From Perkinsela sp. CCAP 1560/9 (taxonomy: Eukaryota > Protista > Euglenozoa: Kinetoplastea), in NCBI GenBank assembly GCA_965644495.1, contig CBFFSA010000014.1:1-64000 (forward strand): a stretch of DNA of 64,000 nucleotides, given 5' to 3'. Position 1 is the first letter of the stretch, and each line of letters opens with the position of its first letter. Shown one piece after another: positions 1 through 43,131 of this stretch. The position numbers and the translations under genes were made by a program. The notes beneath the pieces were generated by a model that worked only from the letters and a program-made list of their open reading frames with translations, did no database searches and was not told the origin of the DNA.

Positions 1-3000
1 TTTTTTCCGAAAAAATCCGAACTTGGCGGACCCGTCCTGCGGATACGCGGGGGGGTCACCCCCGGGTAGGGGGGTGGAAAATGCGCGCCAAGACCCCGGC
101 TACCCTTTCTGCGGTTTTTTTTCGAAAACTAATTTTTTCGAAAAAATTTGATCGACCATGCCCCCCCCCCCCTGGACCCCCCCCTGGACCCCCCCCCTGG
201 ACCCCCCCCATGGACCCCCCATTTTTTTCAAAATTTTTTTTCAGTTTTGGACCACCGGAGCCCCCTTTTATATTTTTTTCTTCTATTATATTACTGTGTT
301 CCCCTTTATATTTTCACTGTTTTTGTTCACTTTTTTTTCAATAATCGAGTGTAGAGCGGTAGTTTTACAACCACCGCAATGCTTTCAACTTAGAAGTCAC
401 TCATGCTGCGCGCTTCGCGTTGAAAACTACCGCCGCGTTTAACGAAGAGCCTAAAAAAGAAAATTTAGCCTGGAAAACGGAAAGATTATAGCCAAAAATC
501 GCCAAATTTCGGGTACAAATGGGGTCATTTTCGCATATTTTTGCTCTCAGAGCACTAAATCCGACATTTGCGCGTGGGAAATCACTCGCAGGCATGAATG
601 AAAGCCTACCGAACGTATTGGGTAGAGAATGCGACTCCAACCATACCATTTTTTCGACACAAAAATGCCCCTTTAGGTCCGAAAAATACTTTTTCACCTT
701 TTTTAGTCAAAAATGGGTCATTTTGGGGGGCGCACCACGGTTAGAAGAAGGGATACCTTGCGAAAACAACTGCGGAGAAAGCTAGTGTAGGTCCCAAACT
801 ATCAAAATACAATAGGGGAAACCATTTTGGAAAAATATTTTTTTTGTCATTTTTTTCGCCAAGTTGAATTTATTTTCAAAAAATTTTTTCCGAAAAAATC
901 CGAACTTGGCGGACCCGTCCTGCGGATACGCGGGGGGGTCACCCCCGGGTAGGGGGGTGGAAAATGCGCGCCAAGACCCCGGCTACCCTTTCTGCAGTTT
1001 TTTTTCGAAAACTAATTTTTTCGAAAAAATTTGATCGACCATGCCCCCCCCCCCCTGGACCCCCCCCATGGACCCCCCATTTTTTTCAAATTTTTTTTTC
1101 AGTTTTGTACCACCGGAGCCCCCTTTTATATTTTTTTCTTCTATTATATTACTGTGTTCCTCTTTATATTTTCACTGTTTTTGTTCACTTTTTTTTCAAT
1201 AATCGAGTGTAGAGCGGTAGTTTTACAACCACCGCAATTTTCTTTTCTAGGCTCTTCGTTAAACGCGGTGGTTGCTTTCAACTTAGAAGTCACTCATGCT
1301 GCGCGCTTCGCGTTGAAAACTACCGCCGCGTTTAACGAAGAGCCTAAAAAAGAAAATTTAGCCTGGAAAACGGAAAGATTATAGCCAAAAATAGCCGAAT
1401 TTCGGGTACAAATGGGGTCATTTTCGCATATTTTTGCTCTCAGAGCACTAAATCCGACATTTGCGCGTGGGAAATCACTCGCAGGCATGAATGAAAGCCT
1501 ACCGAACGTATTGGGTAGAGAATGCGACTCCAACCATACCATTCTTTCGACACAAAAATGCCCCTTTAGGTCCGAAAAATACTTTTTCACCTTTTTTAGT
1601 CAAAAATGGGTCATTTTGGGGGGCGCACCACGGTTCGAAGAAGTGATACCTTGCGAAACAACTGCGTAGAAAGCTAGTGTAGGTCCCAAACTATCAAAAT
1701 ACAATAGGGGAAACCATTTTGGAAAAATATTTTTTTTTGTCATTTTTTTCGCCAAGTTGAATTTTTTTTCAAAAAATTTTTTCCGAAAAATCCGAACTTG
1801 GCGGACCCGTCCTGCGGATACGCGGGGGGGTCACCCCCGGGTAGGGGGGTGGAAAATGCGCGCCAAGACCCCGGCTACCCTTTCTGCAGTTTTTTTTCGA
1901 AAACTAATTTTTTCTAAAAAATTTGATCGACCATGCCCCCCCCCCCCTGGACCCCCCCCCTGGACCCCCCCCCTGGACCCCCCCCCTGGACCCCCCCCAT
2001 GGACCCCCCATTTTTTTCAATTTTTTTTTTCAGTTTTGGACCACCGGAGCCCCCTTTTATATTTTTTTCTTCTATTATATTACTGTGTTCCTCTTTATAT
2101 TTTCACTGTTTTTGTTCACTTTTTTTTCAATAATCGAGTGTAGAGCGGTAGTTTTACAACCACCGCAATATAATTATTTTCTTTTTTAGGCTCTTCGTTA
2201 AACGCGGTGGTTGCTTTCAACTTAGAAGTCACTCATGCTGCGCGCTTCGCGTTGAAAACTACCGCCGCGTTTAACGAAGAGCCTAAAAAAGAAAATTTAG
2301 CCTGGAAAACGGAAAGATTATAGCCAAAAATAGCCGATTTTCGGGTACAAATGGGGTCATTTTCGCATATTTTTGCTCTCAGAGCACTAAATCCGACATT
2401 TGCGCGTGGGAAATCACTCGCAGGCATGAATGAAAGCCTACCGAACGTATTGGGTAGAGAATACGACTCCAACCATACCATTCTTTCGACACAAAAATGC
2501 CCCTTTAGGTCCGAAAAATACTTTTTCACCTTTTTTAGTCAAAAGTGGGTCATTTTGAGGGGCGCACCACAGTTCGAAGAAGTGATACCTTGCGAAAACA
2601 ACTGCGTAGAAAGCTAGTGTAGGTCCCAAACTATCAAAATACAATAGGGGAAACGATTTTGGAAAAATATTTTTTTTGTCATTTTTTTCGCCAAGTTGAA
2701 TTTTTATTCGAAAAAATTTTTCCGAAAAAATCCGAACTTGGCGGACCCGTCCTGCGGATACGCGGGGGGGTCACCCCCGGGTAGGGGGGTGGAAAATGCG
2801 CGCCAAGACCCCGGCTACCCTTTCTGCGGTTTTTTTTCGAAAACTAATTTTTTCGAAAAAATTTGATCGACCATGCCCCCCCCCCCCTGGACCCCCCCCC
2901 TGGACCCCCCCCCCTGGACCCCCCCCATGGACCCCCCATTTTTTTCAAAAAATTTTTTCAGTTTTGGACCACCGGAGCCCCCTTTTATATTTTTTTCTTC

Positions 3001-26524: not shown

Positions 26525-28253
26525 ATAATTTGCGGTTCTTCTATTCTCTCGATGGTTCTTGTTACAAATCACTTTCTGCGCCACTGGAGAGTGCTTTCGC
26601 ATCCATTTAAGACATTGATTCTCACTCCTGGAGAACTTGTTTCTAATGATACTTCTTGAACGACACGAGAATCTTAACGCATCCAGTGCGCGTCATTAAA
26701 AGGTGTGAAGGTTGATAAGGAAGTATAAACGAATTCAAAAAACACACCGTTTATATAAAATTAATGTACAAAAACAAAATTCATCATAAAAAAGGGGCGG
26801 AAAAATGTTCAAGTAAACTTTTTTTTACCAGAAATGAGAAAAGTGCGAATATTGGTTCAGTTTCACCCGGTTAACGGTTAAAATTTCGTCGATTTTAACC
26901 TTAAATCGGTTAACCGTAATTAGGGAGTAACCGTAATTAAGAAATTCCGTAAATAGGGAAAATCGGTTATGCGTTGCCCACAACGAATTTAAACATCAAT
27001 GAAACGATAACTATCAACCATCAATATCGTGCATCTTATACCCACTAGATTCGAAAGTGCGCTGTCGCTTTCTTCTAGTGGTATCCGCATCATCGTTGCG
27101 TTCCCCGTAGTCAAATCCAAGCTAGAATGTTTCCAAGCCCCTCGTAATGCAATTATCTGATACTGTGTAGCAACGTGGTGGCGCATTCCACACGAGGAAT
27201 GCCAGTCGCTCTATTCCTCGCCCAGGAGACTTTCTGCTTCCTGATATTCCAGTCACAGGGCGCATAAAAATATTTTGCTCGGAAAATAAAAATGTCAGTT
27301 TTAATCTTAAATAGATTAACCGTAATTAGGTAAAAACCGTAATTAAGGACAACCGTAATTAAGTAACGCCCGGTAATTAAAGCTGCCTTAATTAAAGTTG
27401 CCTTAATTTTAATTACCCTTAATTGGAGTTTCTACGGTATATCATGTTTTAATTGAATTAGTCTTCCATGCAATTCTTTATGCAAAAGAAATTTCTACAC
27501 GAGCTTAACTTAGAACACGAATTTTCGTGTATTCAAAGGCCTTGCATTTCAGCGTTTCCGGTAGTAAATCGACATGAACTTCTCCCGTAAGCTCGGAGTT
27601 GCCACGAAGTTTGTTTTTTCATGCACTTATAGTGCAGAGATTTGCCTCACTACATGTCCTTACCCGCATACGACGGGTGGATCAAGTGAGGGTTCGCCCT
27701 CGCCGGAGGTGTGCGGGTGCAGAGAGCTGGGGCCCCAGGTGCAGAGAGCTCGGTTGTCATGTGCAGGTGCAGAGAGCCAGATGCGTAATCCCCATATTAC
27801 AGTTTCGGGGGCAATCCGGGTGCAGAGAGCTGCGACAGAGCCGAGTGCAGAGAGCGACCCCCAGGTGCAGAGAGCCGGGAGTCTCGTCGGCGGAGGACAC
27901 GCCTAGTGGCCCTCAAGGGAGGCCACCGTAACGCATGGCCTCTTCGGAAAGGTAACTGCGAGAGAAGGGGAAGCCGAGAGAGGGAAACACACTCACTCCA
28001 GGGGAGTGATTCGGGAAGGGGTGGAAGCACGTCCCCTTCTTCAACAATGGAGGGGGTGGAGACAGTACCTGTAGGTCGCTGTCGAACGGTGACGACCAAT
28101 GGCGACCGGTGGCGAACGCTGTAGGTATTTTTTGAGGTTCGAAGGATCGACCATTAACCATACAAGTCTTCATAAACCACCCTTCATCAATAAGGAACCC
28201 CACCTTATTTTTGGCACAACAACGAAGGCCCCACACAAGCCGCGCTCGTCGAT

Positions 28254-28490
28254 TTATGCAACAAGCTCCGGCGTTAGGGTTTCCACGTCTTGCGCTTTAT
28301 GGCATTCGGGGAAGAGGTTTTTCCCCATTCGGACGCAAGTCGCGGAACAGTGAACGCAACGTTCCACAAAGTACCCTTCTTCGCCGGAGGGCTGGCGGCA
28401 ATCGAGGCAGACGGATGGCGTTTTCGGAGTGAACAGCTTATCTTCCCCACAAGTATCACAAAATTTCTTAGCACAGCGAGAAGTTTGCAT
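28254..28490 (-). CDS. Small Cys-rich (multi-CxxC) ORF between ~60-bp direct repeats, possibly frameshifted
   Basis: CDTC, CLDC, CVHC motifs; direct repeats at 28087-28145 and 28634-28693. Confidence 0.35.
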   Translation of the reverse strand: MQTSRCAKKFCDTCGEDKLFTPKTPSVCLDCRQPSGEEGYFVERCVHCSATCVRMGKNLFPECHKAQDVETLTPELVA

Positions 28491-28808
28491 TAATGGAACT
28501 AACAAAAATAGTTGGGAATGTATAAATTGGTGGTGTATAAAATGCTAAATTGTTTTTGCTGATGTATAATTATATTGATCAGTCGGTCATAAAGTTGAGC
28601 ATTTTGGCCTTCAAAGTGTCGTTTTCTGGAAGTCGGTGACGATCGGTGACGACCGGTGGCGAACGCTGTAGGTATTTTTTGAGACCGTCGAAGGGCCACT
28701 TGCACTCCCTCCAATAGAGAGGGACAGTTTCGGCCTTAGTGCCGGCCGAAAACGGGCATAAAAATATAGTAAGAGTATGTCCGTTGCCGGGGAAAGAAAG
28801 GATAAACT

Positions 28809-28839
28809 CAACAAGGTACATAAACTGTATCTTTATCGA
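28809..28839 (-). ncRNA. Spliced-leader exon remnant (5'-truncated)
   Basis: GATACAGTTTATGTACCTTGTTG resembles the conserved euglenozoan SL 3' half ACAGTTTCTGTACT(A/T)TATTG. Confidence 0.65.
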
Positions 28840-40974: not shown

Positions 40975-41327
40975 TATACCAAGCTCTCATAGCTTGTACA
41001 CTATGCAGTGGCGTATACTGAAAATTTAAGCATATTTTCGATAAAAATAACTTTCACAAGGAACGAAAGGCTTTCAAAAATTATATACTATGTCACAAGA
41101 ACAACGCTTGTGTCCTCCGTGCTTAATAGAAATCCTTTTGGTAAAGAGTTCCTTAGAATTTCGCCGAAAATCTCCCAATTAAAGGACAAATTGGCCACTT
41201 GTAATGTTAGTGGTAATCGATCAAGAAAAACCTGACCAGAAAATTCATTGTCGGAGATGTTAAGATACTTCAGACCCACAGGAAGATTAGATAAGTCAGG
41301 TGACCCCGAAAATTTATTCCCGGCTAG

Positions 41328-43131
41328 TTTGTTCGTTCATGCACTTATAGTGCAGAGATTATGCTCACAAAGTCCGTGCCCGCATACGACGGGTGGATCA
41401 AGTGAGGGTTCGCCCTCGCCGGAGGTGTGCGGGTGCAGAGAGCTGGGGTCCCAGGTGCAGAGAGCTCGGTTGTCATGTGCAGGTGCAGAGAGCCGGATGC
41501 GTAATCCCCATATTACAGTTTCGGGGGCAATCCGGGTGCAGAGAGCTGCGACAGAGCCGAGGTGCAGAGAGCTGGGCGACCCCCAGATGCGGAGAGCCGG
41601 GAGTCTCGTCGGCGGAGGACACGCCTAGTGGTCCTCAAGGGAGGCCACCGTAACGCATGGCCTCTTCGGAAAGGTAACTGCGAGAGAAGGGGAAGCCGAG
41701 AGAGGGAAACACACTCACTCCAGGGGAGTGATTCTGGAAGGGGTGAAGGGGTGGAAGCGCGTCCACTGCTTCAACAATAGAGAGGGACAGTTTCGGCCTT
41801 AGTGCCGGCCGGCAACGGGCATGAAAATACAGTAAGAGTATGCCCTTTGCCGGGGAAAGAAAGGATGAACTAAGGAAAATTTTGATGTTCATGCGCTCGT
41901 TGGCGCAGAGATACAGCCCTTGATGCGACAGCCGATATCATCGGCACAATCCGTATTGACGGATGTCGCACCAAGGGGGTTTAGCTCGGACTCTGTCGGT
42001 AGAGGGGGTCCAGGCAACTCGCCCTCTCTTTACGCAGCCGGAGGGGCGCACTGCAACCGACTCGGTCCCAGAGGTTATGATCATACGCTCGTGGCGCAGA
42101 GATACGTCTCTCTGTGTGACGGCCGATACCATCGGCGCATGACCCGCATACGACGGGTGTCACACAGAGAGTGGAGTGCGAGGTAGGAGACGAGACGCCC
42201 ATCGGTCATGCTACAGCACGTATAGCCATGGTTCATGCTGCAACACGGTCAAGCCGTGGGTTCATGCTGTCAGATGGTCTATCGTGGATCATGATGCATC
42301 ATGGGGAGGTCCGTTACCGCCGCACTCGCTACAGCATGTAGGGAGAGAGGGGTGCAAGTTCGCATCCCCTATACACGCATACAACGTGTCCTCCCGCTGT
42401 AGCACGCCCAGTGGTCCTCAAGGGAGGCCACCATGGCGCATAGCTCCCGGGAGAAGAAAGCACGAGAAGGAGAGAGCCGGGGAGGGAAGAAAGCTCACTC
42501 GAAGAGAGCGAGCCGGGGAGGGGTGAAGAGTGCGAAGTGCGTCCCCTAGTTTTATCATGCACTTATAGTGCAGAGATTTACTCACCATGTCCTTATCCCG
42601 CATACGACGGGTGGATCATGTGAGGTTTCGTCCTCGCCGGAGGTGTGCGGGTGCGGAGAGCTGGCGTCCCAGGTGCAGAGAGCTCGGTTGTCATGTGCAG
42701 GTGCAGAGAGCCGGATGCGTAATCCCCATATTACAGTTTCGGGGGCAATCCGGGTGCAGAGAGCTGCGACAGAGCCGAGGTGCGGAGAGCTGGGCGACCG
42801 CCAGGTGCAGAGAGCCGAGCCTCGTCGGCGGAGGACACGTCTAGTGGTCCTCAAGGGAGGCCACCGTGACGCATGGCCCTCTCGGAGAGGAAAAAGACAA
42901 GTCGAAAAAAAGCCGAGAGGGGGAAGCACACTCACTCCAGGGGAGTGAGTCGGGGAGGGGTGAAGTGGTGAAAGCGCGTCCCCTGCTTCAGCGACAAGAG
43001 GGACAGTTCCGACCTTAGTGCCGGCCGGCAACGGGCATAAAAATACAGTAAGAGTATGCCCGTTGCCGGGGAAAGAAAGGATTAACTAAGGAAAAAGTAC
43101 CAACAAGGTACAGAAACTGTATCTTTATCAA
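41328..43131 (-). mobile_element. SL-headed element concatemer: A (43131-42550) + related B (42549-41880) + A without SL (41879-41328)
   Basis: Two ~0.55-kb A units homologous to 27610-28839; B shares hairpins and terminal architecture. Confidence 0.88.
43101..43129 (-). ncRNA. Spliced-leader exon remnant (nt ~11-39) followed by GTA
   Basis: GATAAAGATACAGTTTCTGTACCTTGTTG|GTAC versus T. brucei SL AACTAACGCTATTATTAGAACAGTTTCTGTACTATATTG|GTA; 13-nt core ACAGTTTCTGTAC identical, with the same spacing to TTG|GT. Confidence 0.78.

What the first reader, a model, noticed from the sequence alone, without database searches (positions are those of the whole stretch)
41328..43131. Mobile element headed by a spliced-leader exon
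Seen: two independent insertions (27610-28839, 41328-43131) begin on the minus strand with T(C/T)GATAAAGATACAGTTT(C/A)TGTACCTTGTTG. This is followed by a ~0.55-kb non-coding body (15-bp perfect stem 43025-43069, iterated GGTGCAGAGAGC motifs) and an A-rich end. Established: ACAGTTTCTGTAC..TTG|GT is the conserved 3' half and donor site of the kinetoplastid SL exon; CRE/SLACS/CZAR retroelements target SL genes. Inference: a dispersed SL-derived element. It could be (a) a SINE-like RNA from an SL gene or an SL-trans-spliced RNA, with the missing first ~8-13 nt reflecting incomplete reverse transcription near the cap, (b) a non-autonomous CRE-clade derivative, or (c) a rolling-circle element that captured SL. 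I know of no such described family.
Basis: partly seen in the sequence, partly recalled or inferred. Interest (0 to 1): 0.92.

Follow-up and report, generated by a model that had tools for sequence, protein, structure and literature searches.

The report
Spliced-leader-headed SINEs in LRR genes
Short non-coding jumping elements of a kinetoplastid protist, stacked head to tail inside leucine-rich-repeat genes, begin with a DNA copy of the cell's own spliced leader, which indicates that they (and the R2-like LINEs that move them) are copied back from leader-carrying RNA, a habit described for dinoflagellate genes but, as far as I could find, not for kinetoplastid mobile elements.

Summary
Both intervals begin, on the minus strand, with the 3' 28-29 nt of the organism's real spliced leader (SL). 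I found the SL RNA gene elsewhere in the genome, and its intron differs from the sequence that follows the head here.

The 1.8-kb interval is not one element. It is four SINE-like pieces stacked head to tail: a full 581-nt unit with the SL head, two 5'-truncated units, and one 190-nt 3' fragment. The other interval is one unit carrying a nested 621-bp insert.

- The unit is a young, non-coding family, with at least 40 copies at 87-100% identity.
- 5' ends vary; 3' ends are fixed.
- Its 3' stem-loop is shared, with compensatory changes, with RT plus restriction-like-endonuclease (R2-type) LINEs.
- Those LINEs also start with the SL from about nt 11, and one lands at the same LRR-codon register, in sense and without target duplication.

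New here:
- The SINE 5' domain holds two segments antisense to the SL.
- Some copies have the SL joined after an internal polypyrimidine-AG.
- None of 85 copies has an AG before GTAC.

How the head is renewed stays open. No RNA data were available. The scan has already noted SL-headed retroelements on other DNA of this genome.

The parts
43101..43129 (-). SL head of the full unit: DNA copy of SL nt 10/11-38. The G at 43129 may come from the target.
43086..43100 (-). GTAC followed by a polypyrimidine tract and AG (GTACTTTTTCCTTAG). GGTAC pairs with SL GTACC in the fold. The AG is used as the SL junction in other copies.
43025..43069 (-). 15-bp perfect hairpin, conserved in all subfamilies, with one compensatory pair (C-G to A-U) and variable loops. 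In this copy the loop (43037-43049) is 12/13 antisense to SL nt 11-23.
42996..43010 (-). Second anti-SL segment (GGAACTGT..TCTT), complementary to SL nt 19-26 and 13-17. It sits at the same place in all subfamilies.
42578..42995 (-). Non-coding body of the full unit. It includes a core shared by all subfamilies (about 42836-42984; motif GGCCTCCCTTGAGGACC at 42846-42862) and six GCTCTCYGCACC iterations (42650-42815).
42549..42577 (-). 3' end: ATCTC, then a 5-bp stem (TGCAC/GTGCA) with loop, then TGA and the TAAAAC tail. This architecture is shared with the LINEs.
42070..42548 (-). Second stacked piece: SINE subfamily B, 5'-truncated (no head, no hairpin module). 95% identical to the body of the SL-headed copy in L004.
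41880..42069 (-). Third stacked piece: last ~190 nt of SINE subfamily C. 100% identical to L021/L022 and 99.5% to L029/L030.
41328..41879 (-). Fourth stacked piece: SINE subfamily A' (90% identical to the first unit), 5'-truncated. It starts at TTTTCCTTAG and has its own hairpin and 3' stem-loop.
41250..41327 (-). Downstream target flank: LRR coding sequence (..GNKFSGSPDLSNLP..) in the same orientation as the elements.
27610..28839 (-). Second insertion: one SINE unit (subfamily A''), with the head at 28809-28837 (1 mismatch) and the junction variant SL|AGTT. It sits in another LRR gene at the same register.
28080..28700 (-). Nested 621-bp insert inside the second SINE. It has ~50-nt direct repeats at both ends (92% identical) and an 83-codon Cys-rich ORF. 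It is not part of the SINE.

Best explanation
The interval holds members of a family of ~0.58-kb non-coding, non-autonomous retroposons (SINE-like). They are most likely moved in trans by the genome's LINEs that encode a reverse transcriptase plus a restriction-like endonuclease (RLE, R2-type).

Shown:
- The unit is discrete and young, with variable 5' truncation and a constant 3' end.
- Its 3' terminal stem-loop (flanked by invariant ATCTC and TGA) is shared with the LINEs, and the stem co-varies.
- LINEs and SINEs both begin with a copy of the host SL, starting mostly around nt 11.
- SINE copies repeatedly sit in sense orientation at one register of the LRR coding repeat, just before x-L-x-x-N-x-F/L-x-G, without target duplication. 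One LINE copy (L034) sits at the same register.
- New copies often land directly behind the tail of an earlier element, which produces stacks such as 41328-43129.

Inferred:
- The LINE protein recognises the 3' stem-loop, nicks the target, and copies the RNA by target-primed reverse transcription.
- The template RNA carries the mature SL at its 5' end, acquired by trans-splicing of element transcripts made by read-through of the polycistronic unit. All large ORFs in the window are on the same strand as the elements.
- The head plus two internal anti-SL segments and the long hairpin fold into a 5' domain that buries the AG dinucleotides of the relic and the internal acceptor.

Open: how the exact SL|GTAC junction is reproduced in each round, because the relic ends in TTG, not AG.
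For: Family and age:
- At least 40 copies at 87-100% identity; 356 first-look candidates.
- 85 copies carry SL|GTAC plus the hairpin module.

Ends:
- 5' heads start at SL nt 3 to 29, and other copies are truncated further. 3' ends are constant.

Link to the LINEs:
- 3' stem: 45/45 cells paired across 5 SINE and 4 LINE tails; 3 of 5 pairs have compensatory changes; 0/500 shuffles reach the score.
- LINE in L084: head from nt 11, 39-nt 5'UTR, first ORF beginning 39 nt after the head, 1417-aa RT ORF, same tail type.
- REL motif C-x2-C-x8-H-x4-C..RHN..RPD-x13-E in L072.
- Best solved relatives are R2 proteins.

Target:
- 13 of 34 genomic 3' flanks encode N-x-[FLI]-x-G at a fixed short distance. 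One of them is a LINE flank.

Head comes from SL on RNA:
- The SL intron differs from the sequence after the head.
- In other families, unrelated sequences follow TTG.
- Four copies have the SL joined right after the internal CTTTTTCCTTAG, in both the TTAATCC and TTCATCC sub-variants.
- The stacked relict cut at the SL's own ACAG occurs 11 times against 0 in the control, once in this SINE family.
- One SINE-B copy has a head reaching nt 3 with the same T at nt 2 as most long heads.
- Heads are identical to the SL in subfamilies whose adjacent sequence differs by ~20%.

5' domain:
- The same fold appears in 9 subfamily representatives.
- 95.5% of cells are paired, against 35-42% when slid.
- SL:downstream duplex z = -1.8 to -5.7 in SINEs; it is not significant in other elements.
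Against: - No RNA evidence. Every run was available only as contigs, and none is on record as RNA.
- The relic ends in TTG, so a transcript of an SL-headed copy cannot regain SL|GTAC through a canonical AG acceptor.
- 0 of 85 copies have AG before GTAC, so no SL-less source copy was seen in the 21 Mb searched. The assembly I could reach is partial.
- The first 3 nt after the head (GTA) equal the first 3 nt of the SL intron.
- LINE and SINE share only the head, the short 3' motif and the target. Body similarity is marginal: a 17-27-nt match, score 32 against a shuffle maximum of 27.
- The 5' hairpin module was not found in the LINE 5'UTRs I could read.
- No LINE with a tail identical to SINE-A was found.
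Confidence: 0.7

Rival explanations
1. The head is inherited, not renewed. One ancestral SL-carrying RNA was retroposed, and since then the relic has been part of the element. SINE RNA is made from the DNA copy (read-through, or a start or cleavage near relic nt 11). The relic stays SL-identical through selection (it pairs with the anti-SL segments) or through copy-choice switching of the RT onto SL-bearing RNAs.
For: - No AG at the junction, and no SL-less source among 85 copies.
- Start positions cluster at nt 11: 41 of 85 copies reach nt 11, 19 reach nt 10, and 1 reaches nt 3.
- Copies lacking the 15 nt after the head still start at nt 11, 11, 15 and 20, so the SL position sets the start, not the distance to the body.
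- Relic nt 11-26 is the part paired with the anti-SL segments.
- A relict-as-promoter idea exists for dinoflagellates (PMC5585692).
Against: - Zero fixed differences in 28 nt across subfamilies that differ by ~20% next door.
- Fresh SL addition is documented by the internal-AG junctions and by the stacked relict.
- One head reaches nt 3.
- No shared parental flank lies upstream of the long heads.
Confidence: 0.18
2. The family derives from an SL RNA gene or from unspliced SL RNA, in the way tRNA-derived SINEs do. On this reading, GTAC.. plus the hairpin is a diverged SL intron.
For: - GTA after the head equals the start of the SL intron.
- GTACC..GGTAC forms the stem that the true gene forms as GTACC..GGTAT.
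- The head is followed by a structured RNA domain.
Against: - Beyond 3 nt there is no similarity to the real intron.
- With ~15 different junction sequences in the genome, one starting GTA by chance is unremarkable.
- No copy has a gene-like full exon or upstream gene context.
- The junction variants SL|TTAATCC fall exactly after a PPT-AG.
Confidence: 0.05
3. The SL piece is target DNA of an SL-gene-specific CRE/SLACS/CZAR-type element, carried along or duplicated at insertion.
For: - The partner LINE has an RLE.
- The modal head start (between nt 10 and 11 of this 38-nt SL, 8 nt upstream of the ACAGTTTCTGTAC core) is the position homologous to the CZAR/SLACS insertion point between nt 11 and 12 (PMC5814959). 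The alignment to the trypanosome SL is from my own knowledge.
Against: - Flanks are LRR genes, other elements' tails or AT-rich DNA, never SL nt 1-10 or the SL intron.
- The SL piece lies at the 5' end, whereas a CRE-type insertion leaves nt 12-39 at the 3' end.
- No SLACS/CZAR relatives were returned.
Confidence: 0.04
4. A rolling-circle (Helitron-like) element that captured an SL.
For: A subterminal hairpin near one end.
Against: - 5'-truncation series with a constant 3' end.
- The hairpin end is shared, with covariation, with RT-encoding LINEs.
- The genome holds over 1000 RT candidates.
- No Rep/helicase partner was seen.
Confidence: 0.01

Closest known systems
RIME/ingi and NARTc/L1Tc (trypanosomatid non-autonomous/autonomous retroposon pairs)
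   Same: Short non-coding partners of LINEs in kinetoplastids. They are dispersed and depend on the LINE machinery.
   Different: Those carry the Pr77 hallmark, which gives unspliced transcripts and includes an HDV-like ribozyme (PMC1874656, PMC3185411, PMC8190864). From my own knowledge, they also have poly(A) tails, APE-type partners and target duplications. Here there is an SL head, no Rfam ribozyme hit, a 3' stem-loop tail, an RLE partner and no target duplication.
CRE1/CRE2, SLACS, CZAR (SL-gene-specific RLE LINEs)
   Same: RLE-bearing LINEs of kinetoplastids tied to the SL. The REL motif is largely matched (motif from PMC12857005). The head start coincides with their cleavage position in the SL.
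   Different: They sit inside SL genes between nt 11 and 12 (PMC5814959), so the SL there is flanking target. Here the SL is the element's own 5' end, and the insertions are in LRR genes and elsewhere.
Dinoflagellate retrogenes with relict DinoSL
   Same: Genomic copies of trans-spliced RNAs that keep the leader. Stacked relicts cut at an AG inside the leader show repeated recycling (PMC5585692; here).
   Different: Those are cellular genes, and DinoSL ends in AG, so it can be re-spliced at the same junction. Here whole transposon families carry the leader, and this SL ends in TTG.
R2 with its non-autonomous parasites (SIDEs), and stringent LINE/SINE pairs recognised through a 3' stem-loop (own knowledge)
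   Same: A site-specific RLE LINE with short parasites that share its 3' end. The RT recognises a 3' structure rather than poly(A).
   Different: R2 RNA is cut out of the rRNA co-transcript by a 5' ribozyme. Here the 5' end is the host SL, and the target is a protein-coding repeat.

Membership tests
SINE-like non-autonomous non-LTR retroposon | Short unit, many dispersed near-identical copies, no conserved ORF | tested here: met
   At least 40 copies at 87-100% identity and 85 heads with the module. Stop-free stretches are not conserved between subfamilies: 167, 110 and 128 codons. Pfam was not run on them.
SINE-like non-autonomous non-LTR retroposon | 5'-truncation series with a constant 3' end | tested here: met
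SINE-like non-autonomous non-LTR retroposon | 3' end shared with an autonomous LINE | tested here: met
   Shared ATCTC, 5-bp stem, TGA motif with covariation. Only the motif is shared, not a longer 3' region.
SINE-like non-autonomous non-LTR retroposon | Head derived from tRNA/7SL/5S with an internal pol III promoter (classical SINE) | tested here: not met
   No tRNA and no Rfam family. The head is the SL.
CRE clade (CRE1/2, SLACS, CZAR): partner LINE | REL domain CCHC..RHD/N..E..R/KPD..D/E | tested here: met
   L072 ORF has C-x2-C-x8-H-x4-C, RHN, RPD-x13-E. The spacing of the middle E motif does not fit (consensus from PMC12857005).
CRE clade (CRE1/2, SLACS, CZAR): partner LINE | Insertion in SL RNA genes between exon nt 11 and 12 | tested here: not met
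   Flanks are LRR genes, a (TG)n repeat, AT-rich DNA or other elements.
CRE clade (CRE1/2, SLACS, CZAR): partner LINE | Phylogenetic placement of RT/REL within the clade | tested here: inconclusive
   Best solved relatives are R2 proteins. No tree was built.
Retro-copies with relict spliced leader | Leader sequence at the 5' end of genomic copies outside SL genes | tested here: met
   508 core motifs against 1 in the control; the two insertions in this window.
Retro-copies with relict spliced leader | Stacked relicts truncated at an AG inside the leader | tested here: met
   11 against 0 in the control; one is a SINE-A copy.
SL RNA gene or SL-RNA-derived element | Exon followed by the SL intron, with a full exon and gene context | tested here: not met
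   The intron GTATGAGAAG.. agrees for 3 nt only. The only copy reaching nt 3 has the retro-copy signature.
5' self-cleaving ribozyme elements (R2, L1Tc type) | HDV-like or other known ribozyme at the 5' end | tested here: not met
   No ribozyme family reached E <= 10 in Rfam. A new ribozyme cannot be excluded.

The most novel reading that the evidence does not exclude
The SL is a working part of these elements, not a passive scar. The SINE displays two anti-SL segments, one in the loop of its long hairpin. Several RT-encoding elements carry anti-SL words in their short 5'UTRs, including one exact 14-mer. These would capture or clamp the SL. The RLE machinery would then treat the SL as CRE/SLACS/CZAR elements do, with a boundary at the same phosphodiester (nt 10/11 here, 11/12 in trypanosomes). 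Dispersed SL-headed elements and SL-gene-specific elements would then be two outcomes of one SL-recognition mechanism, and the head could be regained without a canonical AG acceptor.
Probability: 0.15. Interest if true: 0.88.

Novelty: new variant of a known kind. Interest (0 to 1): 0.7.

Why it matters
Kinetoplastids make mRNAs by cutting polycistronic transcripts and adding a capped SL. A mobile element that lands anywhere must therefore solve the problem of getting a usable 5' end.

Trypanosomatid ingi/L1Tc elements solve it with an internal promoter and ribozyme (Pr77). The elements here seem to use the host SL itself and carry it back into DNA. This gives a built-in tag for retroposition events, as DinoSL relicts do in dinoflagellates.

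It also shows a site-specific RLE LINE/SINE system aimed at a protein-coding repeat (LRR genes). That may drive turnover of this gene family.

Finally, it poses a sharp, testable puzzle: how is an SL|element junction without an AG reproduced over generations?

Tried and rejected
- Rfam on the element at E <= 10: only chance-level hits, no ribozyme or SL family.
- tRNA scan: nothing.
Later loci from the genome search could not be cut out either. As a result, the LINE at C15:189782-193836 and other candidate sources could not be read.
- LINE 5' ends were obtained instead through the look-up of encoding contigs on proteins returned by the homology search.
- RNA evidence: the runs found are contigs of unknown kind. 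One possible RNA run holds almost none of the stretch. No empty-site allele, no read starts and no strand information were available. Summed contig depth is about 50x the flank depth over the SINE-A 5' part, 150-200x over the SINE-C fragment, and about 1000x over the SL. The tool warns that this is not a copy number.
- Search for an SL-less source copy with AG before GTAC: 0 of 85.
- Search for an SL-gene-like chimeric source: only one near-full head, and it is retro-type.
- SINE body against LINE: only a 17-27-nt match to the start of the LINE's first ORF, which is marginal.
- Anti-SL pairing in LINE 5'UTRs by duplex energy: not significant for L028/L084. Exact-word test: one 14-mer and several 8-mers against at most 7 for the sense control. 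This is suggestive only.
- The outer helix CCTTAG/CTAAGG (GCTAGCC/GGCTAGC in subfamily B) could not be tested formally, because the alignment register differs between subfamilies.
- Organism identification via a Nop protein: only the genome's own entry was returned.
- Literature: the SL 3' sequence is in no held paper. No paper found describes SL-headed transposons in kinetoplastids. Aksoy 1990 is not held.

Full report
**What is there**

Read on the minus strand, 43129-43101 and 28837-28809 are copies of one 28-29-nt word. The first is exact and the second has 1 mismatch; none is expected by chance.

The 13-nt core ACAGTTTCTGTAC occurs 508 times in the 21-Mb assembly of this genome, against 1 for the reversed control.

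One locus (L005) holds two tandem units of 297 bp. In these the word is the 3' part of a 38-nt exon that ends ..CCTTGTTG and is followed by GTATGAGAAG... A 5S rRNA gene lies beside them (99 bits). I take this to be the SL RNA gene. SL-5S linkage is known from bodonids (my own knowledge).

So the head of the finding is the organism's real SL from nt 10/11 onward. The sequence after it (GTACTTTTTCC..) is not the SL intron.

**Anatomy**

A search with the first 577 nt gave at least 40 near-full copies at 87-100% identity and 356 first-look candidates. The unit ends at a constant 3' end and begins at variable points of the SL.

The 1.8-kb interval is a head-to-tail stack:
- a full unit (43129-42549);
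- a 5'-truncated member of a second subfamily (42548-42070, 95% identical to the body of the SL-headed copy in L004);
- the last ~190 nt of a third subfamily (42069-41880, 100% identical to L021/L022);
- a 5'-truncated member of a fourth subfamily (41879-41328).

Each piece ends in its own 3' stem-loop and tail.

The other interval (27610-28839) is one unit whose SL is joined to AGTT... It is interrupted by an unrelated 621-bp insert.

Similar stacks occur elsewhere (L033, L037, L040, L029). Repeated use of one target site explains them most simply, because the downstream half of the site survives each insertion. Template jumping of the RT is an alternative that I could not exclude.

**Link to LINEs**

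The genome holds over 1000 RT candidates.

The LINE family seen in L066/L072 encodes an RT and a C-terminal C-x2-C-x8-H-x4-C..RHN..RPD-x13-E motif. This fits the REL consensus quoted in PMC12857005, except for the spacing of the middle E. Its best solved relatives are R2 proteins. No SLACS/CZAR hit was returned, so I call it RLE/R2-type and leave the clade open.

LINE 5' ends were read in three loci:
- An intact 5-kb relative (L084) begins with the SL from nt 11, then a 39-nt 5'UTR, a first ORF beginning 39 nt after the head, and a 1417-aa RT ORF.
- L085 and L086 show further RT elements with heads starting at nt 10/11, 12 and 15.

LINE and SINE tails share ATCTC, a 5-bp stem, a loop, and TGA plus a short tail. 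On 5 SINE and 4 LINE tails, all 45 cells pair, 3 of 5 pairs show compensatory changes, and no shuffle reaches the covariation score.

Thirteen of 34 genomic 3' flanks encode N-x-[FLI]-x-G a few codons after the element end, in the element's orientation. One of these is a LINE flank (L034). The upstream flanks end in L-P-x-x-L-x-x-L. I saw no target duplication.

Taken together, the SINEs and at least one of these LINEs use one integration machinery. This agrees with earlier notes of the scan.

**Where the head comes from**

Evidence for the mature SL on RNA:
- In other SL-headed families, unrelated sequences follow TTG directly.
- Four young SINE copies have the SL joined exactly after the internal CTTTTTCCTTAG. 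This occurs in two sequence sub-variants, so at least twice independently.
- The relict predicted from re-splicing at the SL's own ACAG occurs 11 times against 0 in the control, once in this family.
- One SINE-B copy carries the SL from nt 3, preceded by T.
- Most long heads in the genome read T at nt 2 where the gene has A: 52 of the 73 listed heads that reach nt 2.
- The head shows no fixed difference among subfamilies whose neighbouring 30 nt differ by about a fifth.

Evidence against simple renewal:
- The relic ends in TTG, so a transcript of such a copy cannot regain the same junction at a canonical AG.
- All 85 copies with GTAC plus the module are preceded by T, and none by A. No SL-less source copy is in the 21 Mb.
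- Either the sources lie in DNA I could not reach, or the junction is inherited and only refreshed (for example by copy-choice onto SL-bearing RNAs), or an unknown step is involved.
- There was no RNA evidence.

**The start at nt 11**

Of the 85 SL|GTAC copies, 41 reach nt 11, 19 reach nt 10, and 1 reaches nt 3. By contrast, at least 295 of 508 heads genome-wide reach nt 8.

Copies that lack the 15 nt after the head still start at nt 11, 11, 15 and 20. The SL position sets the boundary, not the distance to the body.

The boundary lies 8 nt upstream of the conserved core. That is the position homologous to the CZAR/SLACS insertion point between nt 11 and 12 (PMC5814959; the alignment to the trypanosome SL is from my own knowledge). 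It is also the 5' limit of the SL part that can pair with the SINE's anti-SL segments. I report both as leads.

**A 5' domain built around the SL**

The 15-bp hairpin is conserved, with variable loops and one compensatory pair.

In this copy its loop is 12/13 antisense to SL nt 11-23.

About 85 nt after the head, every subfamily has GRRACTGT..TCTT(T). This is complementary to SL nt 19-26 and 13-17, and its A/G changes lie only opposite U.

GGTAC at the junction pairs with SL GTACC.

With the head included, nine subfamily representatives fold alike. In that fold 95.5% of cells pair, against 35-42% when slid. This control is biased, because the structure came from these sequences.

The SL:body duplex is stronger than shuffles in the SINEs only.

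In the predicted fold, both AGs of the relic and the internal acceptor are paired.

Among other elements, one RT element has an exact 14-nt antisense of SL nt 6-19 in its 5'UTR, and several have 8-mers. This is suggestive only.

**Comparison and novelty**

Non-autonomous partners of LINEs, RLE LINEs tied to the SL, and leader relicts in retro-copies are each known. The combination is not in the papers I could search. That combination is whole LINE/SINE families headed by the host SL, aimed at an LRR coding register, with anti-SL segments.

The scan itself has reported SL-headed elements on other pieces of this genome.

Noticed in passing
window 28080-28700 (-): A 621-bp insert nested in the second SINE. 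It has ~50-nt direct repeats at both ends (92% identical), a possible ~17-nt duplication of the SINE target (ACTGTC..ATTG), and an 83-codon Cys-rich ORF at 28254-28505. No other copy appears in the loci held.
   Followed up: partly
genome-wide, listed: Among the first 100 long SL heads, 73 reach nt 2. Of these, 52 read T, 15 A, 3 G and 3 C, whereas the SL gene has A. This may reflect RT misreading of a modified cap-proximal base, descent from one founder, or a second SL gene variant.
   Followed up: partly
L005 (G000:C1:659826-662838): Only two SL RNA genes (297-bp period) are at this locus, with a 5S rRNA gene (L005 2218-2336, +) on the opposite strand. Contig depth over the SL is about 1000x flank depth, so larger SL arrays may be collapsed or unassembled.
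   Followed up: partly
L011-L020, L023, L024, L074-L081: Other SL-headed retroelement classes. They have heads reaching nt 2-3 and are preceded by poly(A) of the upstream unit (tandem poly(A)-SL arrays). Their ORFs carry RNase H or LsmAD-like domains. Several 5'UTRs start AATTATTT.
   Followed up: partly
L085 minus strand, about 12-25 nt after the head (rc position 1688): The 5'UTR of an RT element contains an exact 14-nt reverse complement of SL nt 6-19. L086 has T15 followed by an 8-nt antisense of SL nt 24-31 and sits in a (TG)n repeat.
   Followed up: partly
L001, L003, L030, L036: Irregular heads with several partial SL pieces in a row (for example three ATAAAG-type repeats in L030). These may come from RT stuttering or repeated template switching near the SL 5' part.
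   Followed up: no
L008 about 2530-2830 (+): An ORF with a Tc1/mariner-like transposase signature (..GGGSIMIWGC..) lies downstream of a SINE-B copy.
   Followed up: no
G000 C1:1778608, C1:3069710, C9:576630, C10:472495, C12:205889: SINE heads lie 1.4-2.1 kb downstream of an RT domain on the same strand, that is, just behind LINE 3' ends. Direct abutment was seen in L029.
   Followed up: partly
window 5309-63288 (-): Every ORF that gave a Pfam hit is on the minus strand: Nop, RPB1, a C2H2 protein, an RsmB-like methyltransferase, SURF1, LRR proteins, PCIF1-like, RF-1. This fits one polycistronic unit, and both SINE insertions are in sense to it.
   Followed up: partly
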